Positions 1,404 to 62,064 of a DNA stretch of 64,000 nt are shown in pieces (positions within the stretch are counted from its first letter, which is position 1; every line of letters starts with the position of its first letter). Where the stretch lies: positions 1-64,000 of IMG/VR virus record IMGVR_UViG_3300023296_000874; one strand, 5' to 3'. The notes under the pieces were generated by a model. The model saw only the letters and a program-made list of their open reading frames with translations. It did no database searches and was not told the DNA's origin. Both the position numbers and the translations under genes were made by a program.

Positions 1404-1668
1404 CCCGGAGCGTGGGTACGAATTCAGGTACCGAGGCGAGCGCGTAGCTCGTGTGTGGCGTTCTGCGCCTCCGAGAGCCCGTCAGCCCGGCACGCTCTCA
1501 GGCCACTTCCCAGGCGCTAACCGAACTGTGACGGTGCGAACCGCGTGTTGGTGGTGGGAGATTCGGTGGAACGGTGAGCACATCATTGCGAAGAATGCAA
1601 TGGGGTCAGCGGACCAAGCTCGAGACCGTGCAACTAACAAGCTGACTGCTATGTCCTGGGACACATGA
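1324..1668 (+). CDS. hypothetical protein, paralog of 1059..1403 (start uncertain)
   Basis: Same pattern as previous ORF; ATGA coupling to 1665. Confidence 0.6.
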   Translation: MPQDHSERRVRLLWGESIAPSITWAGSPERGYEFRYRGERVARVWRSAPPRARQPGTLSGHFPGANRTVTVRTACWWWEIRWNGEHIIAKNAMGSADQARDRATNKLTAMSWDT

Positions 1669-1910
1669 ATCGTAAGAAGCTCCTTGAGCACATCCGCAAA
1701 ATCGTCTACAAGCAAGCGCAGCTCGCTCAGACCGGTGCGGACGGCACTGGATCGGTTGAGGTGAACCGGGACTGGCTTGTGGAGCTGTCTAAAGAACTCG
1801 GCGTGCTTGCCCGTGATCTATCCACACTGCTTGAAACCGACAGCAAGGGCAGCGAGGAGGTTGATACCTCGCGCCTGACCATGTTGATGGATGATGAGGC
1901 TGACGGATGA
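1665..1910 (+). CDS. small hypothetical protein with C-terminal SRLTMLMDDE tag
   Basis: ATGA overlaps at both ends; paralog of 1907..2161. Confidence 0.8.
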   Translation: MNRKKLLEHIRKIVYKQAQLAQTGADGTGSVEVNRDWLVELSKELGVLARDLSTLLETDSKGSEEVDTSRLTMLMDDEADG

Positions 1911-2161
1911 AGCGTGCAGAGTTGTTGAAGATGATACGGACCATGTCACGTCTGGGAGGGAACCTATCCGCCCACGGAGGGAACGGAGAGGGCAACTTCA
2001 CCACGACAAAGTCGTGGATGAAGTCTCACGGCAAGTCACTCGATGAGTGGGCGGAGAACCTCTCGACCCTCCTCGACCAAGACTCCGTAGGCAGCGAGGA
2101 CGTTGATACCTCACGTCTGACCATGCTGATGGATGATGAGGCTGAAGAGGCCGGATCCTAA
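1907..2161 (+). CDS. small hypothetical protein with C-terminal SRLTMLMDDE tag
   Basis: Near-identical tail to 1665..1910. Confidence 0.8.
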   Translation: MKRAELLKMIRTMSRLGGNLSAHGGNGEGNFTTTKSWMKSHGKSLDEWAENLSTLLDQDSVGSEDVDTSRLTMLMDDEAEEAGS

Positions 2162-11164: not shown

Positions 11165-11187
11165 GTTCCTCTCCGTGCTACTCAACC

Positions 11188-11215
11188 AACGAGTTGAGGG
11201 CAGAGAGAGTCAGAG
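11188..11215 (-). promoter_or_regulatory. putative phage promoter CTCTGAC-N17-CGTT
   Basis: Repeated bipartite motif with fixed spacing upstream of ATG 11164. Confidence 0.7.
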
Positions 11216-14812: not shown

Positions 14813-14834
14813 GTAGCCTCCGTCATATCGTATC

Positions 14835-14862
14835 AACGGAGGCTACGGGCAAATAGTCAGAG
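14835..14862 (-). promoter_or_regulatory. putative phage promoter CTCTGAC-N17-CGTT inside 11-bp inverted repeat covering the SD
   Basis: GTAGCCTCCGT (14813-14823) / ACGGAGGCTAC (14836-14846) perfect inverted repeat. Confidence 0.75.
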
Positions 14863-15990: not shown

Positions 15991-16011
15991 GTGTGTCTCC
16001 GTTGTTCAGGC

Positions 16012-16039
16012 AACGTAACGAACAGCTTGATAGTCAGAG
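16012..16039 (-). promoter_or_regulatory. putative phage promoter CTCTGAC-N17-CGTT
   Basis: Motif in divergent intergenic gap upstream of ATG 15990. Confidence 0.7.
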
Positions 16040-17010: not shown

Positions 17011-17368
17011 TGGATATCTCTCGGTAAGCGATCCGCTCAGGGTCCTCGAAGGAGGATGTCTCTCCGAGGGTATCTATGAAGCAGGTCCGGTGGACGGCTG
17101 TCCAATAGGAGCTATCAAGAGCGTGGTGGGGCATGACGGCAATCACATCCCCCGCCCGGAGCGTGGCTTGACAGTACAGGCACTCCCAAAACTCCAAGAG
17201 CGCGGGGTGCCCGTCTGCAAGCTGAACCGGGTGGAACCAACCGCCAGAGTGGTCCTCCATGATGACGGAGATCCACTCTGGCGTCACCAACACTCTCCCA
17301 GTTTCAGGTACAAGGAGGATGGGGTGAGGCTCCCTGATGCGCACATCGAGGGTAGCCTTCACTTTCAT
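16979..17368 (-). CDS. hypothetical protein
   Basis: ATGA coupling to AAA+ ATPase stop. Confidence 0.65.
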   Translation of the reverse strand: MKVKATLDVRIREPHPILLVPETGRVLVTPEWISVIMEDHSGGWFHPVQLADGHPALLEFWECLYCQATLRAGDVIAVMPHHALDSSYWTAVHRTCFIDTLGETSSFEDPERIAYREISNGTESEPSEG

Positions 17369-19659
17369 CCCACTGCCTGCCCGCGAGTGAACATCTGGTG
17401 GCTCTGCGCGTAGGTGGTGCGGCAGACGTTGATCTGCTGCCTGATGGCCGCGTTCCCGAGCGTGCTCGTCAGAGCCGCTTCCACGAGATCAGGAGTGACG
17501 CAAGTCTTCTCCGCAACGTGAGCCATCACGGTAGCCTTGACGCCGTCCTGCAAGTCGAACACGTTCATGCCGTCGAGCATTGCTACCGCCTCCTTGGCGT
17601 GCTCCGTGTGGTCCACGATGTAGTTCCGCATCATGGTGAGCCACACCTCGTCGATCACCTTCCGGATCACGTCGCCGCACGCACCTTCCAAGAGCTCAGC
17701 CCACAGCTCGTAGTGCTGGTCCAGGCCGTCCTCAACGGGGAGGAAGTTCTCGATGTAGTGCCGAAGGGTGTTGGTCCGGTCCTCGAGCGTCATCTCACCC
17801 ACGATCTCAACGCGGCTGAAGCGGCGCAACATGGGCGTCGGGATGCGCTGCGGGTGGTTGGTGGCTCCCCAGATCGTGATGCCGGGGTACGCAACCACAC
17901 CGTCCATGAGGTTCTGGAACTCCAGGCTCAGGTCAACGCGGCGGCTCAGGTCACCCTGGTCGCTCAGCACCATGTCGATCTCGTCAATCAGGATGTGAAC
18001 CTGCTTGCCGCTCTGCTTCCGGATCTTGATGGCGTGGTCGAAGAGCCGCTTCGGGTTCTTCTGCGCCTCGCCCATCCAGCAGGTCAGGAAGTCGGAGCCC
18101 ACCGCGAAGATCGAGATGCTGTCCTCGTGGGTAGCCATGGCCCGCATCACCTGCGTCTTGCCACAGCCCTGAGGGCCAACGAGAAGGATGTTGTTCTTGT
18201 CCGTGCTGCCGGAGGGCGAGGTGATGAGGAAGAGGTTGCCCCACTCGGTCGCGTCCTTCTGTCCTTCCACGAAGTCCCGTAGGTCGGCATAGCCGGAGCC
18301 CCAGATGTTCTCGAGGCTCACGTTGGGACGCTCGCCGGGGATCACCTCGAGTGCGCCGGGTGCTTCGCCGCCGAACTGGTTGCCAGTGCCAATCTTGCAC
18401 ACGAAGAAGCCGTTGGTGTCGTACAGGAACTTCCGCTCGTCCATCTTGAGGGTGAGTACCTGCTCCACGATGGCCTTGAGGTCGTCCCCGGTCCAGAGGC
18501 ACTCGGCTACGGCGCTGAGGCTCGTCTGGAGGTGCTCCTGGGCAAACAGGTCGGTCCGGCTGAGCATCTTGGTGCCTGGGCGTACCTGAATCTGGCTGAA
18601 GTCGAGCAACTCAAGCTCGTCCGCGAGGGTCCGGTACGACTCTCCGGTGCTCTTGCGGTGGATGCTCAGCCGGTAGAGGTCGATGCCGATGTTGTCCGCG
18701 CAAATCTTCGCCACCTCAGAGAGTGTGTCGAGGGTTTCGTGGAGCTGTCCGTAGAGCTGAAGCAGGGCGGCGATAGGCTCGAGCAGCAGGTTCCGGTTGA
18801 CGGGGTTGCGGATCGCTTCGCAGAGGTCAGCCAGCCGCTGCACGGTGAAGGCGGTCAGGTCCTCGCGGGAGGAGCCGTGGTCGATCTCACCCATCTTGTC
18901 GATGTTGTTCCACACCAGCAGAGCGAGGTCCGTGAGTACGGGGTCAGGGTCACGCCAAGTGGCCGTCACCATTGCGTGTCCGTCGGCGTGGCGCTTGCGG
19001 AGGAGCTGGAAGTAGTTGCTCACCGCCTGAGCAGTCTGCCGGGTGAGTCCGTCGTAGGCAGCCGGTGCCTGCAACAGCACGTGAACTCCCGCCACGAAGG
19101 AGGAGGTCGCGCCACGGTTGAGCTGCTGCTCAAGGGCGAGCTCTCGTAGAGCGTCACCACGTCCCTCGCCCAACTTCTTGAGCAGAGCGGCGGCGGTCTC
19201 TTCCTTGAGGCCCGCTTCGGCAACCTCGGTTCCGAGCTGGTCCATGGTGTCGTCGAAGCTGACGACGTTGGCACCGTTCATCAAGTCCACGGCGCGGATC
19301 ACACCGTCGTACATCACTTCCATGCCGGTGTACGCTTGGAGCAGGATGGACACGGGGCCGAAGGAGCTTGCGCCCGCACCCTTGAACATGTCCTCGGGCT
19401 CGCCGAAGGTCATCTGCTGGGTGCGTTGGGCGCTGCGGTTGTAGCTCTCGCTACCGAGCCGCTTGGCAATCGCCTCAAGGCTTTCCTTGCCGAGGCGGAT
19501 CTGGTCGACGGTGTTGGGCAGGTTGCCCAGCATGTCACGCAAGCCGCCCGCGATCCCCGACTTGATCACCTGAACGGTCCGGGCGTACCGGATGGGGTCA
19601 GAGATGGAGGCTTCGCGGGCCAGTACAGATGCGATGATGCTATCTACGTCGTTGTTCAA
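17365..19659 (-). CDS. AAA+ ATPase with ~450-aa uncharacterised N-terminal region
   Basis: Walker A GPQGCGKT, Walker B ILIDEID, SRH ATNHPQRIPTPMLRRF; TTG start after GGAGCACCAC. Confidence 0.9.
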   Translation of the reverse strand: MNNDVDSIIASVLAREASISDPIRYARTVQVIKSGIAGGLRDMLGNLPNTVDQIRLGKESLEAIAKRLGSESYNRSAQRTQQMTFGEPEDMFKGAGASSFGPVSILLQAYTGMEVMYDGVIRAVDLMNGANVVSFDDTMDQLGTEVAEAGLKEETAAALLKKLGEGRGDALRELALEQQLNRGATSSFVAGVHVLLQAPAAYDGLTRQTAQAVSNYFQLLRKRHADGHAMVTATWRDPDPVLTDLALLVWNNIDKMGEIDHGSSREDLTAFTVQRLADLCEAIRNPVNRNLLLEPIAALLQLYGQLHETLDTLSEVAKICADNIGIDLYRLSIHRKSTGESYRTLADELELLDFSQIQVRPGTKMLSRTDLFAQEHLQTSLSAVAECLWTGDDLKAIVEQVLTLKMDERKFLYDTNGFFVCKIGTGNQFGGEAPGALEVIPGERPNVSLENIWGSGYADLRDFVEGQKDATEWGNLFLITSPSGSTDKNNILLVGPQGCGKTQVMRAMATHEDSISIFAVGSDFLTCWMGEAQKNPKRLFDHAIKIRKQSGKQVHILIDEIDMVLSDQGDLSRRVDLSLEFQNLMDGVVAYPGITIWGATNHPQRIPTPMLRRFSRVEIVGEMTLEDRTNTLRHYIENFLPVEDGLDQHYELWAELLEGACGDVIRKVIDEVWLTMMRNYIVDHTEHAKEAVAMLDGMNVFDLQDGVKATVMAHVAEKTCVTPDLVEAALTSTLGNAAIRQQINVCRTTYAQSHQMFTRGQAVG

Positions 19660-22298: not shown

Positions 22299-22320
22299 GC
22301 AAGTTTCCTCTTGTCGGAGC

Positions 22321-22348
22321 AACGAGTGGTCGCCGTGTGTACTCAGAC
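22321..22348 (-). promoter_or_regulatory. putative phage promoter GTCTGAG-N17-CGTT
   Basis: Motif upstream of ATG 22298 in divergent gap. Confidence 0.65.
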
Positions 22349-26710: not shown

Positions 26711-26734
26711 GCTGTGCTCCCGTTCTAATGGGTC

Positions 26735-26762
26735 AACGTAGCCACGCGCTTCTATCTCAGAT
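26735..26762 (-). promoter_or_regulatory. putative phage promoter ATCTGAG-N17-CGTT
   Basis: Motif upstream of ATG 26710. Confidence 0.7.
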
Positions 26763-27913: not shown

Positions 27914-27921
27914 GTGTCTCT

Positions 27922-27949
27922 AACGCTCCGAGCTGGTCGGAAGTTAGAG
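27922..27949 (-). promoter_or_regulatory. putative phage promoter CTCTAAC-N17-CGTT, palindromic, possibly leaderless
   Basis: CTCTAAC/GTTAGAG and TCCGA/TCGGA inverted repeats; CGTT ends 8 nt before ATG 27913. Confidence 0.7.
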
Positions 27950-31439: not shown

Positions 31440-31807
31440 CCCATAGGCTGTGGGTTGATGGTCGGAGGGCGGTCCCACTCGTCAGGCACGGTGCCCAACT
31501 GTTCCGTCCAATCAACGCCTCGAGCTATGCAGACGTCAGAGTAGTTCTTGAGGTAGTAGGGAGCCATCAGGGGGCTGATCCACGGAAGGTTGTCGGCCAC
31601 GTCTTTCGCGTCCTTCATGCCCATCCCCAGGTCCCGCATGGTCCGGATGACTTCCATCCGGTCACCGCCTGTGATGGTGACCGTTCCACGGTCGTCAGGG
31701 ACCATCTTCTGAACCCAGCCACGCTGGAGCACCTCGTTGCAGAGGTCGGTCATCTCCTCGAAATCGAGGGTGGCAAGGTAGTCTGCTACTTCTTCACGGG
31801 TCGGCAT
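31436..31807 (-). CDS. divergent ribosomal protein bL12 (L7/L12)-like protein, copy 2
   Basis: [23 protein letters not shown] (NTD-like); [29 protein letters not shown] (CTD-like). Confidence 0.65.
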   Translation of the reverse strand: [123 protein letters not shown]

Positions 31808-32745: not shown

Positions 32746-32768
32746 TTCGTGCTCCGTGCTACTCCTTC

Positions 32769-32796
32769 AACGCCTTTCGTAGCGTGAAAGTCAGAG
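32769..32796 (-). promoter_or_regulatory. putative phage promoter CTCTGAC-N17-CGTT
   Basis: Motif overlapping upstream stop codon. Confidence 0.7.
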
Positions 32797-33784: not shown

Positions 33785-33792
33785 GTGAGCTC

Positions 33793-33820
33793 AACGTGCC
33801 TACTTGCACGGAACTCAGGC
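33793..33820 (-). promoter_or_regulatory. putative phage promoter GCCTGAG-N17-CGTT, possibly leaderless
   Basis: CGTT ends 8 nt before ATG 33784; CGTGC/GCACG inverted repeat. Confidence 0.6.
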
Positions 33821-36975: not shown

Positions 36976-37002
36976 TGGTCTGCCTCTTGTTGTGTCCCCT
37001 CT

Positions 37003-37030
37003 AACGGGGAGCGGCACTCAGAAGTTAGAG
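37003..37030 (-). promoter_or_regulatory. putative phage promoter CTCTAAC-N17-CGTT, palindromic
   Basis: CCTCTAAC/GTTAGAGG inverted repeat spans the motif. Confidence 0.7.
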
Positions 37031-37054: not shown

Positions 37055-37309
37055 TCAGGGTAGCGCGGCGATCTCTTCATCGTTCAGGAAGAGGCTGCAC
37101 CCGTCAGAGTCCCACCCGAGCTTCCGAAGCGCCTCTTCGGTCTCAAGGTGGATGGTCACACGGTCCTCAAGAGAGCCACCCGCTATGAAGGCGTGGATCC
37201 TGTCGGAGTGTTGGCCCGCGTCGGAAGGGTCGTCGGGGTCGCGCTGAACGCACTCCGCTCCAATGCCTTCCTTGCACCGTGGGCAAGCAATGTGGTCTGA
37301 AATCGGCAT
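37055..37309 (-). CDS. small Cys/His hypothetical protein
   Basis: CPRC...C...H; abuts 37310. Confidence 0.65.
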   Translation of the reverse strand: MPISDHIACPRCKEGIGAECVQRDPDDPSDAGQHSDRIHAFIAGGSLEDRVTIHLETEEALRKLGWDSDGCSLFLNDEEIAALP

Positions 37310-37549: not shown

Positions 37550-37822
37550 TCAGGCTGAAGGTTGCGTGCCGCCCGGCTTTTCTTGCTCCACCAGCTTGTA
37601 GTGCTTCATGTTCGTCATGAAGTTGTTGTAGAGAGCCCAGTTGTCCTGCTTGGACTTGATAAGGGTTCGCTCTTTCATCCGCTTGATCAAACCGGCAATC
37701 TCGGGCCTTGTGAGTGGCCGGTCGAAGTGCGTCTGCGCCGCCATGACGTTTCCGAAGATGATGGCGTTGATTGAGCGTGCTGATTTGAACGGCGACGGGC
37801 CGCTGATCCAGAAGGTTTTCAT
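37550..37822 (-). CDS. stand-alone copy of the repeat domain of 37901..39652
   Basis: FWISGPSPFK...INAIIF...LTRPEI...IKSKQ...LYNNFMTNMKHY aligns with the repeats. Confidence 0.7.
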   Translation of the reverse strand: MKTFWISGPSPFKSARSINAIIFGNVMAAQTHFDRPLTRPEIAGLIKRMKERTLIKSKQDNWALYNNFMTNMKHYKLVEQEKPGGTQPSA

Positions 37823-37900
37823 CGTTTTCTACTCCCTGTTGGTCGTAGAACGTGTGAACCTCCATGAGATCGGCGAACCCGGTTCGCGGTCATACTGGTT

Positions 37901-39652
37901 TCAGGCTGCAGCCGCCGCCACACACTGCTCGGGGTACCACTTGCGGAGCGTGTTGAGGAACTGGTAGCTGAGTTGGTCAGCGGGGCGTCGGCTCTTCGCC
38001 ATGCCGGAGGCAACCACCGCAGCGGCAATCCGCTCCACGTCGGCTTCCGTCCACGCGCCTTGGGTCACGAGGGTCACCCAGATGCTGTGGTTGATGCCGC
38101 GCCTGTAGGGGTTCTCACCCTTCAGGAGGTAGGAGGCAGAGGCCGGGTCAACAGCCGCAACGGGCGGGGCAGCAACCGGCTTGTCGCCGTCCACTTCCTT
38201 GTAGAGGCCCGCGTAGTCCTTGAGGTTGTTGTAGAACTGGTACCCGATCTGGTCAGCGGGTCGCCGGGTCTTGATCGTGCCCGCGTCAATCAACTGCTGA
38301 GTCACCGCGTCCACGTCGTCCCGTGTCCACGTACCCAGCGCAACCAACGCAGCCCAGATGCTGAAGTTGATGCCCCGTCGGTACGGGCTCGCTCCACAGA
38401 AGGCGTAGCGCACGGGCGTCGGCACGTTCACCGCGAGGCCTGTGATCACGGTCGCACGGGTCACCGCTGCTGCAACCACGTCACCCGGCATCACCGGGTT
38501 CTCTTCGGCACGCTCGATGGCCTTGTAGCCACGGGCGGTCTCGATGAACCCCCAGGCAATGCCGTCAGCCGGGCGTCGGGATTTGATCGCGCCGCTGTCG
38601 AGCAGTGCGTCCACCGTGGTCAGGAGGTCGTTGAAGTCGAAGGTGCCACGGGTCACGAGGGCGTCGTAGATGGGGTGGCTACCTGCCCAATGCTTGTACG
38701 GGTTCGGGATGCCTACGAAGCGGTAGCGTGTGCGCGCAGCGTGCTGAACTGCGCGGCCCCCTCGGGTATTACCGTTGGGGGCCGCTGTCTCTCCGATTGC
38801 TTCCTTCTCAAGTGCCACTGCCACGAAGGTTCCAGCTACCTCTTCGGGGCTGCGGCGGGAGGCGAACTTGCCTTGATCCATCAGTCGCCCGGTGATCACC
38901 ACAATCTCCCGCATCGTCACTGGGTTCCCGATGGCGTTCAGGGTGTCCCACAACACGTAGCACGAGCCTCGCTGGAAGGGGTTGTCGCCCTTCACGAGGT
39001 ACACCGGGCCGACGGAGGTGCTTGTGCGCTTCCGCTTGCTCGGCTTGGCTCCGTCCCTGGTCACCGCGAGGTACTCGGTGATGAGGGCGTGGAGGCTCTT
39101 CACGCGGTAGTGGATGGTCTCCTTGCGCTTGCCGATGATCCGGCTGATGTCTGCCGGGCGGTAGCCCATGGTCCGCAGGATGAAGGTGGGGAGGAACGCG
39201 GGCTTGCGCTCCGCGATGTACCGAATGAGATCCGATTCCACCACCTCTGCCGGAATGCTGAGCTCCGAGAGGTTGCTGGTCTGCTGCAACCGGTCGAGGT
39301 CCACCGTGCCGCGAGCGGGCTCGGAGTCGTCCGAGGGCACCGAGAGGCTCATGGCGTTGGTGTTGGCGTCCCGGTTGTCCTTCTTCCAGCCGTTCACGAG
39401 GCAGTTCCGGATGGTCGTACCGAGGTACGAACGGAACTGACGCGGAGTCATCAGCCCCGCATCTACCTTCTCCTTCACACGGGGGAAGAAGTTGGACGCC
39501 ATGCAGTGAATGATGATGTCCTGGAACTTGTCGTCGATGTCCTCTTCGGGAACCTTCTGTCCACGCAGTCCACCGATGATGTACTTGCGGAATGCCATGA
39601 GCTGGTTGACGTCCGTCGGGACGAAGTCCGTCTCGGTGTGTGTGCGTGCCAT
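37901..39652 (-). CDS. ECF sigma70-like factor fused to four ~70-aa repeats
   Basis: Region 2-like DDKFQDIII...FRSYLGTTIRNCLVNGWKK; region 4 HTH GYRPADISRIIGKRKETIHYRVKSL; four G-x-[NS]P[YF]...[KA][ST]RR[PS] repeats. Confidence 0.75.
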   Translation of the reverse strand: MARTHTETDFVPTDVNQLMAFRKYIIGGLRGQKVPEEDIDDKFQDIIIHCMASNFFPRVKEKVDAGLMTPRQFRSYLGTTIRNCLVNGWKKDNRDANTNAMSLSVPSDDSEPARGTVDLDRLQQTSNLSELSIPAEVVESDLIRYIAERKPAFLPTFILRTMGYRPADISRIIGKRKETIHYRVKSLHALITEYLAVTRDGAKPSKRKRTSTSVGPVYLVKGDNPFQRGSCYVLWDTLNAIGNPVTMREIVVITGRLMDQGKFASRRSPEEVAGTFVAVALEKEAIGETAAPNGNTRGGRAVQHAARTRYRFVGIPNPYKHWAGSHPIYDALVTRGTFDFNDLLTTVDALLDSGAIKSRRPADGIAWGFIETARGYKAIERAEENPVMPGDVVAAAVTRATVITGLAVNVPTPVRYAFCGASPYRRGINFSIWAALVALGTWTRDDVDAVTQQLIDAGTIKTRRPADQIGYQFYNNLKDYAGLYKEVDGDKPVAAPPVAAVDPASASYLLKGENPYRRGINHSIWVTLVTQGAWTEADVERIAAAVVASGMAKSRRPADQLSYQFLNTLRKWYPEQCVAAAAA

Positions 39653-39688
39653 TGAATCTGTACCCCTTTTTCGGTCTTGTCACAGCGT

Positions 39689-39717
39689 AACGAACTGAGC
39701 CTACGAGAAACTCAGAG
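39689..39717 (-). promoter_or_regulatory. putative phage promoter CTCTGAG-N18-CGTT upstream of the sigma-like gene
   Basis: Same motif with 18-nt spacer. Confidence 0.6.
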
Positions 39718-39815
39718 CCTTTATTGCCCAACCACAGGCATCGTCACACAGGTTTGTCGGGTGGCGCAGTATTGTAACGGCATGACCCGTTTCACAAAAG
39801 CGCATTCTATGAAGT

Positions 39816-40055: not shown

Positions 40056-40937
40056 TCAGTCGTTCTCCACTACGTTGAGCCTGCCCAGCGCAGCCTTCTT
40101 CTTACCCTCTTCGAGGATCCGCGCCTTTTCGATGTTGGCGGGAGCTGCGTAGCAGTAGGTGCAGGCGTGTGGGCAGGCAAGTGATGTCTGGGTAGCTACC
40201 TCAATGGCGGCTGAGCAACGGCAGTCGTCAACCTTGGGGTGCATCAGCCCCAGGTTGTCTATACCATAGATCTGGTCGATCCAGTAGGCGTTGACACACG
40301 TAGCCGGTCCAAAGTTGTCCGCAACTCCCCTGAAGGAGTCGTCGTCCCAGCACCCGAGGAGCATCATGTCGTGCTTGTCGAGGATGGCGCACATCTGCCG
40401 CAAGATCTCCCGGCGCTCGTTTTCGTCACGGGTCTCGGGGATCGCGGTCTCGCTGTGGAGGAAGCTGAAGTAGCACTCCCGCACGCCCAGGTCGGCCATG
40501 AATTGAGCCACCCGCTCGAACTCGCTCCAGTCAGCAGGCACGGGGGAGTAGCGCCACTGCATCTTCTCGACGCCGTACTCTGCCACCATGTCAGCGAAGC
40601 ACTGGAGCTGAATGTCCAGCGCAGGCACCTTGAGCTCGGTGGAGGGGTCGCCGCAGATGGTCATCGCAAAGAACTGTCGGTAGTTCGCGTCCAGCTCGGC
40701 GCGTCGTGGGTTCTTGAGGAAGCGTCGGTAGTCCTTGGAGTACCAGAACAGGGAGTGCATGTCCTCGGGAGCGAGGCTCCACCGTGCGGGCATCCCAGTC
40801 TGAGGGTGTGGCGCGTCGATGTACCCACGGTCCAACCACCGGAAGAATCGCTTCATCCAGAAGGCGGGGATGTCGGTGTTGCGGCTCAAAGTGATGGGGA
40901 ATCCCCACTCGAGCGGCTTCAGGATTTCGGTTGACAT
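40056..40937 (-). CDS. DUF1848-like protein (radical-SAM/photolyase-related)
   Basis: ITLSRNTDIPAF, FWYSKD, QWRYSP, CPHACTYCYA. Confidence 0.8.
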   Translation of the reverse strand: MSTEILKPLEWGFPITLSRNTDIPAFWMKRFFRWLDRGYIDAPHPQTGMPARWSLAPEDMHSLFWYSKDYRRFLKNPRRAELDANYRQFFAMTICGDPSTELKVPALDIQLQCFADMVAEYGVEKMQWRYSPVPADWSEFERVAQFMADLGVRECYFSFLHSETAIPETRDENERREILRQMCAILDKHDMMLLGCWDDDSFRGVADNFGPATCVNAYWIDQIYGIDNLGLMHPKVDDCRCSAAIEVATQTSLACPHACTYCYAAPANIEKARILEEGKKKAALGRLNVVEND

Positions 40938-40959
40938 GGCACCTCCGTTACCTCATGAT

Positions 40960-40987
40960 AACGTACCCAAGGGGGAGGTACTCAGAG
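40960..40987 (-). promoter_or_regulatory. putative phage promoter CTCTGAG-N17-CGTT
   Basis: Motif upstream of ATG 40937; TACCTC/GAGGTA inverted repeat. Confidence 0.7.
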
Positions 40988-41197
40988 GCTTTTCACGATT
41001 TCAAGTAGAAGAAGCACGGTGGCTCCTACACCTATTACCACGAACACGGCGGCGAACAGGAACCTGCCCCGTTTCTCCTTGGCGATCTCCTCATGGAACA
41101 TCGCGTCGGTGATGTAGCCGTTGGCGGTGTTACCGAGCTCATCGAGCTGTCGCTTAACGGCCCGGTCCCAGCACCCTTGGTAGCCTCGGGCTTCCAT
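40982..41197 (-). CDS. small C-terminally anchored membrane protein
   Basis: Hydrophobic C-terminal helix; TAATG coupling. Confidence 0.6.
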   Translation of the reverse strand: MEARGYQGCWDRAVKRQLDELGNTANGYITDAMFHEEIAKEKRGRFLFAAVFVVIGVGATVLLLLEIVKSL

Positions 41198-41775
41198 TAT
41201 ACCGTCATCATCGCGAGGATTGCCATGCCGTCACGCACGATGTCCCCGTGGTCGAAGCCGAAGATGATCTTGCCGGAGCGGATGTCCTCCTCATGGATCC
41301 AGGCGGTCCAGAAGGCGTCGTCGTCTCCCCGAGCCTTGCGGGCCTCAGCGGGCGTCACACGGCAGCAGTAGGCGAGGCTGACAACGTGGCGGCGGGGGTC
41401 ACGGTCGGTGGCTCCGTACACGTCGATGAGCGTCATGAAGTCCCGCTCGAGGCCGGTCTCTTCCTTGAGCTCGCGCGGGGCACAGTCCTTGGGGTCCTCG
41501 CCGTAGTCCACGAACCCGCCCGGAGTGCAGACGAAGCCGTCGGTGTGGCAGTAGGGAGGGTTCGCACGCCCGATGAGCAGGAAGTGTCGTCCCGCGCGGG
41601 TGGGAGCGGGGCCACGACGGTCCACCATCGTGTCGCCCAGCAGAGCGCGTCCCTCTTCCTGCCAGCCCTCCCAGTTGGGCAGGTCGTCCTCGGGGATGTC
41701 GGTAGCGACGAGGATGTCGGTGCAGAGGCTGGAGGTGCGGTAGGTCGGAGCTTCGAGCTGTTCAACGGTTGGCAT
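41197..41775 (-). CDS. NUDIX hydrolase (ADP-ribose pyrophosphatase/NrtR-like)
   Basis: PGGFVDYGED...RELKEETGL, VYGATDRDPRRHVVSLAY. Confidence 0.85.
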   Translation of the reverse strand: MPTVEQLEAPTYRTSSLCTDILVATDIPEDDLPNWEGWQEEGRALLGDTMVDRRGPAPTRAGRHFLLIGRANPPYCHTDGFVCTPGGFVDYGEDPKDCAPRELKEETGLERDFMTLIDVYGATDRDPRRHVVSLAYCCRVTPAEARKARGDDDAFWTAWIHEEDIRSGKIIFGFDHGDIVRDGMAILAMMTV

Positions 41776-51986: not shown

Positions 51987-53174
51987 TTAGAGGACGCTCT
52001 CTACGATACGAACGTAGAGGTCATCCAGCTTGTCCATGTCGGGGCTGTAAGGTAGCACGGGAGTGAGCTCGGGAAGGGGCTCGAGGCCCTTCTTCACCCG
52101 CGCAGTCACACGCTGCTTCTCGGTACCGTAGTACGATGTGTAGATGTCACCGAGAGCGGCGTTCTCGCGATCAGCCCAGTCCACCAACTCGTCGTAGGTC
52201 CAGGCACCCTTGCGGATAGCGAGGAGCTCTTCACGGTCGATCCCGCCGCGCCACACATGCACCTTGCCCGTCGTCAAGATCTCCCGTCCCATGCGGAGCA
52301 GGCGAACGAGGTGGGCACCGTGCTTGGTGTCGTAGCCGGAGGCAGCTTCCAGCGCAGCCCGCTTGGGGTTCCGCTGACGCTTCCAGGTCTCGAAGCTCTT
52401 CCAGTTCTTTTGGGCGTCCTTGTACCGCTTCTCACCCTTGAGGGCCTCGAGCAGTCCTTCGTCGATCCCGATGGAGCGTGCGGCAGCAATCCACAGTTCA
52501 TCGTCGGTGGTCACGCCGATGGTGGCGAGGGTCTCAGCGATGTTGTCCTTGGCGCGGATCTTCTCGCTGTCGGCCATTTCGCCGAAGTCCCACTTCCACT
52601 CGTCAAGCTGCTTGTCGATGGCGGCGAGGAGCACGTTGCGCTGATGCTGCGTCACCACTTCCTCACCGAGGCCAAACTCCTCGCGGGTCGGCTTGTGGGT
52701 CGGAGGGTTGAGCAACCAGGCCCGGTGTCCCTTGATGCGCTTGAGCTGCTGGAAGGCGTAGCCGGTGAAGCGGTGCTTGGCGGCTCCACTCAGGAAGAGG
52801 TCCCGGTGTTCGCGGAGCAACTGCCCGGCCCAGTTGTGCATGAGCAGCTCTTCGTCGCGGCAGAAGAGCACGTCGAGCATTCCGGGGTTGCAGTCGGCGG
52901 TCAGCTTCATGAACTTGCCGAGGCCGTACACGACGCCCTCGAGCTTCTCGCGTTCGGCGGCGTCCATCTGCTCGGCGTCGAGGTACTTGCGGAAGGGTTC
53001 CATCTGCCCAGGCTTGTCGCACTGGTCGAAACGCTTGCGGAAGGTCAAGTGGTACGGACGTGGAGGTAGGCAGACGCCCTTGAGGTCTACGTCCGAAGTG
53101 TCGGTGTGGAGCCCGTAAGCTCGGGAACCAGCCACTCCAACGAGGATCGCAGAGTCATGTAGGTCGAAATCCAT
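51987..53174 (-). CDS. predicted nucleotidyltransferase (Pol-beta superfamily, PF10127-like)
   Basis: GSRAYGLHTDTSDVDLKGV, NPGMLDVLF, GYDTKHGAHLVRLL. Confidence 0.85.
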   Translation of the reverse strand: MDFDLHDSAILVGVAGSRAYGLHTDTSDVDLKGVCLPPRPYHLTFRKRFDQCDKPGQMEPFRKYLDAEQMDAAEREKLEGVVYGLGKFMKLTADCNPGMLDVLFCRDEELLMHNWAGQLLREHRDLFLSGAAKHRFTGYAFQQLKRIKGHRAWLLNPPTHKPTREEFGLGEEVVTQHQRNVLLAAIDKQLDEWKWDFGEMADSEKIRAKDNIAETLATIGVTTDDELWIAAARSIGIDEGLLEALKGEKRYKDAQKNWKSFETWKRQRNPKRAALEAASGYDTKHGAHLVRLLRMGREILTTGKVHVWRGGIDREELLAIRKGAWTYDELVDWADRENAALGDIYTSYYGTEKQRVTARVKKGLEPLPELTPVLPYSPDMDKLDDLYVRIVESVL

Positions 53175-53198
53175 TGTGGCCTCCTTGCACAGCTATAC

Positions 53199-53226
53199 AA
53201 CGCCACGAAGGCCCTGAAAGTCAGAT
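53199..53226 (-). promoter_or_regulatory. putative phage promoter ATCTGAC-N17-CGTT
   Basis: Motif upstream of ATG 53174; GGCCTTC can pair with SD GGAGGCC. Confidence 0.7.
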
Positions 53227-53748: not shown

Positions 53749-53769
53749 TGAGCGCTCCTATACTCGGAC

Positions 53770-53797
53770 AACGTAGCGACAGGGGGAGATCTCAGAG
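53770..53797 (-). promoter_or_regulatory. putative phage promoter CTCTGAG-N17-CGTT
   Basis: Motif upstream of ATG 53748. Confidence 0.7.
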
Positions 53798-55442: not shown

Positions 55443-55477
55443 GTGGTGCTCCGTGCGTGGTTGCTTGCTACATACCT

Positions 55478-55505
55478 AACGCCCGCTGCCCCCACGAACT
55501 CAGAG
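55478..55505 (-). promoter_or_regulatory. putative phage promoter CTCTGAG-N17-CGTT
   Basis: Motif upstream of ATG 55442. Confidence 0.7.
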
Positions 55506-62008: not shown

Positions 62009-62036
62009 AATTCCTCGGGTGTCCAGTTACTCCATC

Positions 62037-62064
62037 AACGACGGATACCCCGAGGAAGTTAGAG
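62037..62064 (-). promoter_or_regulatory. putative phage promoter CTCTAAC-N17-CGTT with spacer pairing to the SD
   Basis: TTCCTCGGGT (62011-62020) versus ACCCCGAGGAA (62047-62057). Confidence 0.75.

What the first reader, a model, noticed from the sequence alone, without database searches (positions are those of the whole stretch)
37550..39652. ECF-like sigma factor fused to four copies of a novel domain, next to a free single copy of that domain
Seen: after sigma regions 2 and 4 (~residues 20-195) come four ~70-aa repeats: YLVKGDNPFQRGSCYVLWDTL...FASRRSPEEVAGTF, YRFVGIPNPYKHWAGSHPIYDAL...IKSRRPADGIAWGF, YAFCGASPYRRGINFSIWAAL...IKTRRPADQIGYQF and YLLKGENPYRRGINHSIWVTL...AKSRRPADQLSYQF. The next gene (37550..37822) is one divergent copy (FWISGPSPFKSARSINAIIF...IKSKQDNWALYNNF). 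Established: ECF C-terminal extensions (SnoaL, TPR) regulate activity, but I do not recognise this repeat. Inference: basic, winged-helix-like nucleic-acid-binding modules, with the free copy acting as competitor or anti-sigma. Together with the 16 promoters this would be a self-contained phage transcription switch.
Basis: partly seen in the sequence, partly recalled or inferred. Interest (0 to 1): 0.8.

Follow-up and report, generated by a model that had tools for sequence, protein, structure and literature searches.

The report
Phage sigma factor with unnamed repeats
An uncultivated 257-kb salt-lake phage encodes a divergent ECF-type sigma factor carrying four copies of a rare, unnamed 78-residue domain, with a fifth, free and basic copy encoded just downstream; the gene pair is conserved in related phages, but what the domain does is still unknown.

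Summary
ORF 37901..39652(-) is 583 aa and ORF 37550..37822(-) is 90 aa.

**N-terminus.** Residues ~12-200 form a very divergent ECF-type sigma (sigma2, acidic linker, sigma4). All 7 homologues hit phrog_1740 and, below cutoff, TIGR02937. Foldseek's best PDB matches are ECF sigmas.

**Repeats.** Four ~78-aa repeats follow (R3 vs R4 49% identical, E 1e-21). The downstream ORF is a true divergent fifth copy: 30.6 bits against a profile built from sigma-fused copies only, versus at most 8.6 bits for shuffles.

**The domain.** It matches no Pfam, NCBIfam or PDB family. A confident model (pLDDT 95) has no significant Foldseek neighbour and only looks winged-helix-like. About 51 cluster representatives exist among 1.84 billion proteins.

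**Conservation.** The sigma-plus-free-copy pair is conserved in at least four related uncultivated phages. The number of fused copies ranges from 2 to 4.

**Promoters.** An ECF-like motif (CTCTGAsTT-N15-CGTTR) occurs 15 times (16 with one mismatch), on the gene strand only, against 0.3 expected. One copy lies upstream of the sigma gene, here and in three relatives.

**Not supported or untested.** Only the free copy is basic (pI ~10). No conserved DNA element lies upstream of -35. The anti-sigma or competitor role is untested.

Verdict: a new variant of a known kind; function open.

The parts
37901..39652 (-). Gene for the 583-aa ECF-like sigma factor with four C-terminal repeats (P0001)
   Evidence: ORF listed. 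Homologues with the same architecture.
39371..39619 (-). Sigma region 2 (residues ~12-94). Four helices. Family-invariant D41, Q44, D45 and the stretch F73-R74-x-Y76-L77...N83...R94.
   Evidence: AF2 helices 15-31, 36-52, 55-64, 70-89. Invariant columns. TIGR02937 alignment 36-189 to model 25-159. Sigma70_r2 weak in 4 of 7. Foldseek hits to ECF sigmas.
39251..39370 (-). Long acidic linker between sigma2 and sigma4 (residues ~95-134), predicted disordered
   Evidence: pLDDT below 50 over residues 86-136. Net charge -4.
39053..39250 (-). Sigma region 4 (residues ~135-200), helix-turn-helix, followed by the basic tail KPSKRKRTSTS (201-213)
   Evidence: AF2 helices 135-149, 151-161, 166-173, 177-199. 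Foldseek sigma4-only hits 3hug and 2o8x. HTH-type weak Pfam hits at 160-192. Charge.
38780..39013 (-). Repeat R1 (residues 214-291). Its orthologues in the other sigmas form one clade.
   Evidence: clade support 99/88.
38501..38737 (-). Repeat R2 (residues 306-384), the best-conserved copy (motif IAWGFIETARGY)
38186..38419 (-). Repeat R3 (residues 412-489)
   Evidence: R3/R4-type clade with lineage-specific duplications.
37904..38143 (-). Repeat R4 (residues 504-583). Modelled alone at pLDDT 95.2, pTM 0.85: strand, three helices, strand.
37550..37822 (-). Gene for the free 90-aa copy of the domain. Basic (pI 10.2, net +8). Orthologues sit directly downstream of the sigma gene in related phages.
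   Evidence: Adjacency. Separate clade with 100/99 support.
37873..37887 (-). Small GC-rich inverted repeat (GCGAACC G GGTTCGC) in the 78-nt spacer between the sigma gene and the free-copy gene. No T-run follows it.
   Evidence: Read from the sequence. No terminator-like site found. A comparable hairpin sits at the same place in L004.
39688..39718 (-). Promoter-like motif CTCTGAGTT-N16-CGTTA, about 40 nt upstream of the sigma start codon
   Evidence: The equivalent motif lies upstream of the sigma gene in L004, L008 and L009.
62036..62063 (-). Promoter-like motif site
55477..55504 (-). Promoter-like motif site
53769..53796 (-). Promoter-like motif site
53198..53225 (-). Promoter-like motif site
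40959..40986 (-). Promoter-like motif site upstream of the DUF1848 gene. A matching site is at the homologous place in L001 (4837).
37002..37029 (-). Promoter-like motif site whose two halves are complementary (CCTCTAAC...GTTAGAGG)
33792..33819 (-). Probable 16th site, with one mismatch (CCTGAGTT-N15-CGTTG), 12 nt before an ATG
32768..32795 (-). Promoter-like motif site
31513..31540 (-). Promoter-like motif site
27921..27948 (-). Promoter-like motif site. CGTTA lies only 12 nt before the ATG, so the transcript would have a very short leader or none.
26734..26761 (-). Promoter-like motif site
22320..22347 (-). Promoter-like motif site
16011..16038 (-). Promoter-like motif site
14834..14861 (-). 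Promoter-like motif site
11187..11214 (-). Promoter-like motif site

Best explanation
**What is shown or well supported.**
- The 583-aa protein is a highly divergent group-IV (ECF-type) sigma factor of an uncultivated jumbo phage (257,533-bp contig, salt-lake metagenomes).
- After sigma4 and a short basic tail it carries four tandem copies of a rare, unnamed alpha/beta module of about 78 residues (strand, three helices, strand; loosely winged-helix-like).
- A fifth copy, strongly basic, is encoded as a separate gene directly downstream. It is probably in the same transcript, since no terminator-like site lies between the genes.
- The sigma-plus-free-copy pair is conserved in related phages.

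**Inferred.** The sigma recruits host RNA polymerase core to a phage promoter class, CTCTGAsTT-N15-CGTTR. This class has 16 sites in the window, all on the gene strand and 12-40 nt upstream of start codons. One site precedes the sigma operon itself, so the operon would reinforce its own expression.

**Most likely role of the repeats (inference, about 0.35-0.4).**
- They attach immediately after sigma4, so they should project upstream of the -35 element.
- There they would act as accessory modules that hold the holoenzyme on DNA. The contact would be largely sequence-independent, with DNA itself or with a DNA-bound partner, possibly the free basic copy.
- The result would be to strengthen or gate initiation.
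- The free copy would tune this by occupying the same ligand, or by pairing with the fused copies.

My confidence that the object is an ECF-like sigma fused to 2-4 copies of a new domain, with a conserved free paralogue, is about 0.85. The overall figure below is lower because the mechanism is uncertain.
For: **Sigma identity.**
- phrog_1740 'RNA polymerase sigma factor' is hit by all 7 homologues (best E 3.2e-11).
- TIGR02937 sigma70-ECF is hit by 7 of 7, colinear over nearly the whole model (best E 1.4e-4).
- Sigma70_r2 is weak in 4 of 7.
- The AF2 model shows two four-helix domains joined by a disordered linker, with no region 1.1 or 3.
- The top 11 Foldseek PDB hits are ECF sigmas SigH, SigE and SigL over about 185 columns, and CnrH and RpoE follow a few ranks lower (probability up to 0.99).

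**Repeats and free copy.**

**Conserved module.** The order NUDIX, DUF1848, small ORF, sigma, free copy is seen in the window, L001, L004, L009 and the P0009 contig. In the P0009 contig the free-copy gene overlaps the sigma stop codon.

**Promoter class.**
- 15 strict sites on the minus strand, 0 on the plus strand, 0.3 expected. One more with a single mismatch.
- All sites precede an ATG.
- The motif lies upstream of the sigma gene in the window, L004, L008 and L009. It also lies upstream of the DUF1848 gene in L001, which has only 39% GC.

**DNA or transcription context of the domain.**
- It is fused to sigma at the C- or N-terminus (P0004).
- It is fused to an array of Sigma70_r4/HTH_23 units in another huge-phage contig (P0052).
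- In bacteria it occurs as a two-copy protein beside an ImuA-like/ImuB-like pair.
- The free copies are uniformly basic (pI 9.0-10.4).
- Family-wide conserved polar residues include three arginines (consensus).
- Weak wH-type similarities appear.
Against: - No experiment or transcript data exist. No RNA run was listed.
- The sigma match is below every curated cutoff. A profile of the N-terminus finds no sigma among PDB sequences.
- The link between this sigma and the motif is inferential. Only 64 kb of a 257-kb genome was searched, so another phage sigma elsewhere could read the motif.
- The fused repeats are near neutral, not basic.
- No conserved sequence lies upstream of -35. There is only a slight AT enrichment.
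- The 8-residue loop between helices 2 and 3 is unlike a canonical tight HTH turn.
- No significant structural neighbour with a known DNA-binding mode was found.
- Known ECF C-terminal extensions act mostly through protein contacts, not DNA (PMC8999054).
Confidence: 0.45

Rival explanations
1. The repeats form a regulatory extension that works through protein contacts, as in ECF41, ECF42 and ECF57 sigmas. They would fold back on sigma2, sigma4 or the linker, or bind a partner such as an RNA polymerase subunit, a host factor or the free copy. Either way they would switch the sigma on or off. The free paralogue would be the partner or a decoy, acting like an anti-sigma or anti-anti-sigma.
For: - Every characterised ECF C-terminal extension regulates through intramolecular or protein-protein contacts (PMC8999054).
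- The free copy occupies the co-transcribed downstream position that is typical of anti-sigma genes, and it is conserved there.
- The fused copies are near neutral.
- R1 and R2 are differentiated, and each is conserved as its own clade, which suggests distinct fixed partners.
- No upstream DNA element is conserved.
Against: - Copy number varies from 2 to 4, and one copy can sit N-terminal of sigma (P0004). That is unusual for a precisely docked autoinhibitory domain.
- The domain also occurs without any sigma, in bacterial proteins and fused to HTH arrays.
- The full-length AF2 model gives no confident inter-domain packing (pTM 0.28).
- The free copy has no anti-sigma domain signature.
Confidence: 0.3
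2. The modules read a feature of phage DNA other than base sequence, such as a base modification or a DNA structure. This would restrict the holoenzyme to phage DNA. The free basic copy would coat or mark that DNA.
For: - A NUDIX hydrolase and a DUF1848 protein carrying a CxxxCxxC motif are always encoded just upstream of the sigma operon.
- Multivalent tandem modules with variable copy number fit a repeated, non-sequence ligand.
- The free copies are basic.
- Several motif sites have complementary halves that could form hairpins.
Against: - There is no evidence that this phage modifies its DNA.
- The neighbouring enzymes have no assigned DNA-modifying activity here.
- Only a minority of the motif sites are palindromic.
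Confidence: 0.1
3. The N-terminal part is not a working sigma. It would be an HTH transcription factor or DNA-binding protein that merely resembles sigma2/sigma4, and the motif would be read by a different factor.
For: - All sigma matches are below the curated cutoffs.
- Foldseek E-values are only about 1e-2, with low TM.
- A PDB sequence search finds no sigma.
Against: - The matches are colinear over both sigma domains in 7 of 7 homologues.
- Region 2.2-like and 2.3/2.4-like invariant residues are present.
- The 11 best Foldseek hits are all ECF sigmas.
- An ECF-layout motif stands upstream of the gene in four relatives.
Confidence: 0.07

Closest known systems
[quoted passage not shown]
   Same: - A sigma2-linker-sigma4 core with no regions 1.1 or 3, plus an extra C-terminal part in place of a classical membrane anti-sigma.
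- A promoter of -35/-10 'CGT' layout that also precedes the sigma gene.
- For ECF42, a conserved small partner gene in the neighbourhood whose domain can also be found fused (PMC8999054).
   Different: - The extension is none of the known types. It consists of 2-4 tandem copies of an unnamed 78-aa alpha/beta module.
- The neighbouring small gene is a paralogue of the extension itself.
- The protein is phage-encoded.
- The core scores below the ECF model cutoff (15.5 vs 42.9 bits for the window's protein).
- The sigma2-sigma4 linker is unusually long (about 45 aa) and acidic.
Phage-encoded sigma factors (PHROG 1740; from my own knowledge, phiEco32 gp36, SPO1 gp28/gp34 and T4 gp55 with gp33)
   Same: A phage protein that retargets host RNA polymerase core to a phage-specific promoter class. 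All 7 homologues match phrog_1740. Group 2 jumbo phages are reported to encode sigma factors rather than their own polymerases (PMC7824862).
   Different: - Only the sigma part (residues 21-195) aligns to phrog_1740. The repeats do not.
- No similar DNA or protein is present among 50,697 GenBank phage records.
- The T4 analogy, in which the sigma-like gp55/gp33 is tethered to DNA through the sliding clamp, is only a functional parallel for the tethering idea. It is not homology.
Winged-helix (wHTH) DNA-binding domains
   Same: - A three-helix core packed against a small three-stranded sheet, about 80 aa.
- Sub-threshold hits to F-93_WHD, MarR, GMT-wHTH and the ArsR family.
- TM about 0.7 to predicted models of the MethyTransf_Reg / WH_HI_0096 clusters, and 0.6 to a FUR model.
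   Different: - The strand order differs: an N-terminal strand and a C-terminal strand replace the beta-hairpin wing.
- An 8-residue loop carrying the conserved S-x-R-P replaces the tight turn before helix 3.
- No significant Foldseek match in PDB (best E 0.76).
Classical ECF anti-sigma factors (anti-sigma domain proteins such as RseA, RslA, NepR)
   Same: The gene lies immediately downstream of the sigma gene, is probably co-transcribed, and is conserved with it.
   Different: The free protein is a copy of the sigma's own appended module. It is soluble, 85-104 aa, and has no anti-sigma domain or zinc-binding signature.

Membership tests
Sigma-70 family, group IV (ECF) | Sigma region 2 domain with the core-binding and -10-recognition signatures | tested here: met
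   Four-helix domain at residues 15-89. Invariant D41/Q44/D45 and F73-R74-x-Y76-L77..N83..R94. TIGR02937 aligned from model position 25 in 7 of 7. Sigma70_r2 weak in 4 of 7. ECF sigmas are the top Foldseek hits.
Sigma-70 family, group IV (ECF) | Sigma region 4 helix-turn-helix domain | tested here: met
   Helices 135-199. The TIGR02937 alignment runs to model position 159 of 165. Foldseek hits to isolated sigma4 domains 3hug and 2o8x. Sigma70_r4_2 weak in homologue P0019.
Sigma-70 family, group IV (ECF) | Absence of regions 1.1 and 3 | tested here: met
   Only a disordered 45-aa linker lies between the two domains, and there is no N-terminal extension.
Sigma-70 family, group IV (ECF) | Score at or above the curated family thresholds (TIGR02937, Pfam Sigma70_r2 / r4_2) | tested here: not met
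   TIGR02937 gives 15.5 bits for the window's protein against a cutoff of 42.9. The best E-value among the seven homologues is 1.4e-4. The Pfam sigma models are sub-threshold. No sigma is found by profile search of PDB sequences.
Sigma-70 family, group IV (ECF) | Binds RNA polymerase core and directs initiation at a cognate promoter, often its own | not testable with these tools
   Indirect evidence only. The motif TCTRAS-N17-19-CGTTR occurs 15 times on the gene strand against 0.3 expected. It also lies upstream of the sigma gene in four phages.
ECF sigmas with known C-terminal extension types (SnoaL-like, TPR, WD40, Cys-rich, fused anti-sigma) | The extension belongs to one of those domain families | tested here: not met
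   No such Pfam or NCBIfam hit on the full protein or on 20 repeat copies. The list of known types is from PMC8999054.
Winged-helix DNA-binding superfamily (for the repeat) | Three-helix bundle with a beta-sheet wing, and significant sequence or structure similarity to members | tested here: inconclusive
   The secondary-structure order is strand-H-H-H-strand at pLDDT 95. Only sub-threshold wH Pfam hits in single members. Foldseek against PDB gives best E 0.76. TM 0.6-0.7 to predicted wH-containing models.
Winged-helix DNA-binding superfamily (for the repeat) | Binds nucleic acid | not testable with these tools
   Only charge (free copies pI 9.0-10.4, fused copies near neutral) and genomic or fusion context bear on this.
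ECF anti-sigma factors (for the free copy) | Anti-sigma domain fold or sequence that binds sigma2/sigma4 | tested here: not met
   No family hit. The protein is a homologue of the sigma's own repeats.
ECF anti-sigma factors (for the free copy) | Encoded next to the sigma gene and co-transcribed with it | tested here: met
   It lies directly downstream in the window, L001, L004 and L009, and overlaps the sigma stop codon in the P0009 contig. No terminator-like site lies between the genes. Co-transcription itself is inferred.

The most novel reading that the evidence does not exclude
The 78-aa module would be a new class of sigma-appended DNA or RNA-polymerase tether. Together with its free, basic paralogue it would form a previously undescribed way of controlling a sigma factor, which could be called paralogue competition or paralogue bridging. 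In this scheme the regulator is a detached copy of the sigma's own accessory domain. The number of fused copies (2-4, at the N- or C-terminus) would set the strength of the tether. The same module would be reused in bacterial proteins linked to ImuA/ImuB-type loci and in HTH-array factors of other huge phages.
Probability: 0.25. Interest if true: 0.8.

Novelty: new variant of a known kind. Interest (0 to 1): 0.6.

Why it matters
Sigma factors with appended domains are the main known way for ECF sigmas to sense signals without an anti-sigma factor. All described extensions belong to a handful of domain types.

This case adds a phage-borne sigma whose extension is a rare, confidently folded and uncharacterised module. 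The module is present in variable copy number, and a detached paralogue is always encoded beside it. The cognate-looking promoter set is also visible in the same genome.

That makes a compact, testable system: one sigma, one small protein and one motif. It could show how a huge phage takes over host transcription and give a function to a domain with no annotation. It might also yield an orthogonal sigma-promoter pair with a built-in modulator.

The domain's second home, next to ImuA/ImuB-like genes in Myxococcota-like genomes, offers an independent route to its function.

Tried and rejected
1. **Similarity to deposited phages.** Megablast and tblastn of the locus against 50,697 GenBank phage records found no match. 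A scan of IMG/VR found only the source contig itself.
2. **Profile searches of PDB sequences.** The repeat (A2, A4) and the sigma part (A3) gave nothing below E 0.1.
3. **Foldseek with the pLDDT-95 repeat model.** Nothing significant in PDB. The weak hits were methionine aminopeptidase insert, MDM2/SWIB, cullin WHB and MukF. In BFVD the only suggestive hit was an uncharacterised Pseudomonas phage POR1 protein (E 1.7e-2, TM 0.66).
4. **The repeat as a degenerate copy of sigma4 or sigma2.** Rejected: hhalign of A4 against A3 gave probability 0.4%.
5. **A conserved DNA element upstream of -35 for the repeats to read.** None found in the 15 aligned sites. There is only slight AT enrichment.
6. **A sigma-70-type promoter or an intrinsic terminator around the operon.** None found.
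7. **Transcript evidence.** The DNA is present in many salt-lake metagenome runs, but no RNA run was listed.
8. **tRNA and Rfam scans of the window.** Nothing found.
9. **ESM Atlas feature search.** Scores of 0.5-0.64, well below the level at which a hit means anything.
10. **Three of the 54 profile hits (P0042, P0049, P0053).** These are long repetitive proteins that match only short stretches. I discarded them after inspecting the sequences.
Full report
**1. What is in the sequence**

The two ORFs named in the finding exist exactly as described: 37901..39652(-), 583 aa, and 37550..37822(-), 90 aa. Both show the codon-position GC pattern of the surrounding minus-strand genes.

The four C-terminal repeats are real:
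- R3 vs R4: 49% identity, E 1.5e-21.
- R2 vs R3: 35%, E 5e-10.
- R2 vs R4: 40%, E 6.5e-9.
- R1 vs R4: 32%, E 4.9e-6.

HMM envelopes are R1 214-291, R2 306-384, R3 412-489 and R4 504-582. The unit is therefore about 78 residues, separated by linkers of 14-27 residues.

The downstream ORF is a true but divergent copy. A profile built only from 34 sigma-fused copies, excluding it and its orthologues, scores it 30.6 bits (E 1.4e-5 at Z = 1e6). The maximum over 3000 shuffles of its own sequence is 8.6 bits. No further copy of the domain and no paralogous sigma is present in the 64-kb window.

**2. The N-terminus is an ECF-type sigma, but a very divergent one**

No curated model is passed. For the full-length protein, Pfam gives only noise and TIGR02937 gives E 0.16.

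The weak signals are nonetheless consistent:
- The protein hits PHROG 1740, 'RNA polymerase sigma factor', at E 8e-5.
- When the N-terminal ~205 residues of all seven homologues are scanned separately, 7 of 7 hit phrog_1740 (best E 3.2e-11).
- 7 of 7 also hit TIGR02937 sigma70-ECF, colinearly from model position 25 to 159 of 165 (best E 1.4e-4).
- 4 of 7 hit Pfam Sigma70_r2 weakly.

The family-invariant residues look like ECF regions 2.2 and 2.3/2.4. They are D41, Q44, D45 and F73-R74-x-Y76-L77...N83...R94 (the comparison with the ECF consensus is from my own knowledge).

The AlphaFold model has two four-helix domains (15-89 and 135-199). A 45-residue acidic, disordered linker joins them, and nothing corresponds to regions 1.1 or 3.

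Foldseek against the PDB returns ECF sigmas as its 11 best hits over about 185 aligned columns: M. tuberculosis SigH and SigL and E. coli SigE. CnrH and RpoE follow a few ranks lower. Probability reaches 0.99 and E is about 1e-2. TM is low because the two domains are oriented freely in the model.

I accept 'ECF-like sigma'. It should not be filed in an existing ECG/ECF group.

**3. The repeat is a rare, unnamed, confidently folded domain**

Sequence searches found no family:
- Twenty copies scanned against Pfam gave no shared family. Single members gave sub-threshold hits to winged-helix families: F-93_WHD at 4e-4, MarR and GMT-wHTH.
- Profile searches of all PDB sequences gave nothing better than E 0.16.

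An exhaustive HMMER search of 1.84 billion cluster representatives with the repeat profile found only 54 proteins at E <= 1e-3. Three of them are unrelated repetitive proteins, which leaves about 51.

With an 87-sequence alignment of domain copies (A4), R4 folds at pLDDT 95.2 and pTM 0.85. The order is strand, helix, helix, helix, strand. A conserved N-P-[FY]-[RK]-x-G loop lies before helix 1, and an 8-residue loop carrying S-x-R-P lies before helix 3.

Structure searches were equally unrevealing:
- Foldseek finds no significant neighbour in the PDB (best E 0.76).
- In BFVD there is one suggestive neighbour, an uncharacterised Pseudomonas phage POR1 protein (E 1.7e-2, TM 0.66).
- The ESM Atlas structure search gives TM about 0.7 to predicted models of MethyTransf_Reg / WH_HI_0096 clusters and about 0.6 to FUR, PriA and PqqD models.

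'Winged-helix-like' is therefore a fair description of the shape. It is not an established membership. The repeat is not related to the sigma domains themselves (hhalign probability 0.4%).

**4. Architectures and evolution of the domain**

*Sigma-fused forms*:
- Four copies: P0001, P0002, P0003, P0008, P0009.
- Three copies: P0010, P0011.
- Two copies: P0005, P0006, P0007, P0022.
- P0004 has an extra copy N-terminal to the sigma.

In a tree of 87 copies, the R1 copies form one clade (99/88) and the R2 copies group loosely. The R3/R4-type copies form a third group with lineage-specific duplications. The minimal and ancestral form is therefore sigma + R1 + R2.

*Free copies.* The 80-104-aa free copies found next to sigma genes form their own well-supported clade (100/99) on a long branch. 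They are uniformly basic, with pI 9.6-10.4 and net charge +4 to +10. The fused copies are near neutral, at -1, +1, +1 and +3.

*Two other architectures exist:*
- A bacterial family of 240-330 aa has an N-terminal amphipathic helix, a Pro/Ala-rich linker and two copies of the domain.
- P0052 has one copy followed by an array of Sigma70_r4/HTH_23-like units. It is encoded on a 478-kb phage-like contig.

**5. Conserved gene neighbourhood**

The window comes from IMGVR_UViG_3300023296_000874. This is a 257,533-bp contig found in many salt-lake metagenome runs.

Related sigmas (45-52% identity) come from groundwater and other metagenomes. One of their contigs has only 39% GC. The gene order is nevertheless kept: NUDIX, DUF1848, small ORF, sigma, free domain copy.

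The gene after the sigma is a copy of the domain in L001, L004 and L009. In the P0009 contig it overlaps the sigma stop codon by 4 nt.

No terminator-like site separates the two genes in the window. A short GC hairpin without a T-run lies between them, at 37873-37887. Sigma and free copy are therefore a conserved pair and very probably co-transcribed.

**6. The promoter class**

The pattern TCT[GA]A[CG]-N17-19-CGTT[AG] occurs 15 times on the minus strand and never on the plus strand. About 0.3 occurrences per strand are expected.

Aligned, the consensus is CTCTGAsTT-N15-CGTTR. Every site lies 12-40 nt upstream of an ATG of a minus-strand gene or of an unlisted small ORF. A -35 element followed 15-17 nt later by a 'CGT'-containing -10 is the ECF promoter architecture (established knowledge).

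One site (39688-39718) lies about 40 nt upstream of the sigma start codon. The same arrangement is found upstream of the sigma gene in three relatives:
- L004: CTCTTATGT-N15-CGTTC.
- L008: CTCTGAGTT-N15-CGTCC.
- L009: CTCTGAAGG-N15-CGTTA.

The site before the DUF1848 gene is also conserved in the 39%-GC relative L001. This conservation across very different base compositions is good evidence that the motif is functional. It also suggests that the sigma operon belongs to the regulon, which fits positive autoregulation.

That this particular sigma reads the motif is an inference. Only a quarter of the genome was available to me.

**7. How it most likely works**

*Shown or well supported:* an ECF-like sigma, a new repeated module, a conserved free paralogue, and a strand-specific promoter-like motif.

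*Inferred:* the sigma takes host core polymerase to the motif.

For the repeats I favour an accessory DNA-tethering role, at about 0.35-0.4, for these reasons:
- They start 13 residues after the last sigma4 helix, after a basic KPSKRKR tail. Geometrically that is the upstream side of the -35 element.
- The domain's other fusion partners and neighbours all relate to DNA or transcription: sigma, sigma4-like HTH arrays, and a locus with ImuA-like/ImuB-like genes.
- The free copies are strongly basic.
- The family-wide conserved polar residues include three arginines.
- The shape is winged-helix-like.

Points against a sequence-specific reader are the lack of any conserved element upstream of -35 and the near-neutral charge of the fused copies. 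Any DNA contact would therefore have to be non-specific, or made through a DNA-bound partner, for which the free basic copy is the obvious candidate.

The main rival, at about 0.3, is a protein-contact regulatory extension of the kind described for ECF41, ECF42 and ECF57 (PMC8999054). In that case the free copy would be the partner or a decoy. The variable copy number, and the N-terminal copy in P0004, argue mildly against a precisely docked autoinhibitory domain.

Other possibilities:
- A reader of modified or structured phage DNA (about 0.1).
- 'Not a working sigma' (about 0.07).

**8. Comparison with what is known, and novelty**

Functionally the object resembles ECF sigmas with C-terminal extensions, and phage sigma factors in general.

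It fails membership of every described extension type: SnoaL-like, TPR, WD40, Cys-rich and fused anti-sigma. It also scores below the ECF family cutoff.

The free copy sits where an anti-sigma gene would sit but is not an anti-sigma domain.

I found no paper describing this architecture. My searches covered phage sigma factors, huge phages and ECF extensions. The jumbo-phage survey PMC7824862 mentions only minimal single-HTH and RpoD-like phage sigmas.

I rate it a new variant of a known kind. The kind (sigma factor with an appended regulatory or accessory region) is known. The appended domain, its tandem multiplication and the detached paralogue are new. Interest is 0.6: the case is clean, conserved and testable, but its function is unresolved and the lineage is rare.

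Noticed in passing
L011:4962-8082; L013:4719-7969; L014; L015; paralogous locus L016:4842-6668 / L019: A bacterial two-copy form of the domain (N-terminal helix, Pro/Ala-rich linker, two copies) occurs in a few Myxococcota-like or 'Proteobacteria' MAGs: 9 loci among 185,579 species genomes. In at least three MAGs it lies between a divergently transcribed Ham1/RdgB-like gene and a RecA_N-weak (ImuA-like) gene followed by an IMS (ImuB / Y-family-like) gene. A second paralogous locus also has the ImuA-like neighbour.
   Followed up: partly
L020:5001-5912 (P0052; 477,962-bp contig): In another huge phage-like contig, one copy of the domain is fused to an array of Sigma70_r4 / HTH_23-like units. 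This is a second, independent link between the domain and sigma4-type HTH modules.
   Followed up: partly
P0004 residues 23-99: One sigma homologue carries an extra copy of the domain N-terminal to sigma2, joined by a long Pro/Ala-rich linker, in addition to two C-terminal copies.
   Followed up: no
window 40056-40937(-) and 41197-41775(-): A DUF1848 protein (E 4.8e-32) with a C-x3-C-x2-C motif (CPHACTYC) and a NUDIX hydrolase are always encoded just upstream of the sigma operon. This holds in the window and in every relative examined. Their role is unknown.
   Followed up: partly
window 27921-27948 and 37002-37029 (-): In some promoter-like sites the -35 and -10 halves are reverse complements of each other (CTCTAAC...GTTAGAG), so the single strand or the RNA could form a hairpin. 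Most sites are not palindromic.
   Followed up: no
window 37873-37887 (-); L004:7171-7226: A short GC-rich hairpin without a T-run lies between the sigma gene and the free-copy gene. It is seen in the window and, with a different sequence, in L004. It could be an attenuator or a processing site.
   Followed up: no
window 1818-1903 and 2060-2145 (+): An 86-nt direct repeat (79% identity) reflects two adjacent paralogous small genes, 1665..1910 and 1907..2161.
   Followed up: no
window 37055-37309 (-): The 84-aa ORF two genes downstream of the free copy has a weak match to Phage_zn_bind_8, a putative DNA-binding phage zinc finger (E 1e-3, below cutoff).
   Followed up: no
window 17365-19659 (-), 51987-53174 (-): A 764-aa protein has a C-terminal AAA+/clamp-loader-like region (phrog_3757, phrog_168). 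A 395-aa protein matches nucleotidyltransferase phrog_388 (E 7e-51). Most other large ORFs have no PHROG match, which shows how divergent this phage is.
   Followed up: no
whole window: No tRNA genes, and no Rfam family at gathering threshold, in 64 kb of a jumbo-phage genome.
   Followed up: yes
BFVD entry A0A0N9SJI4 (Pseudomonas phage POR1, 202 aa): This is the only suggestive structural neighbour of the repeat (Foldseek E 1.7e-2, probability 1.00, TM 0.66 over all 80 residues, 6% identity). It is uncharacterised.
   Followed up: no
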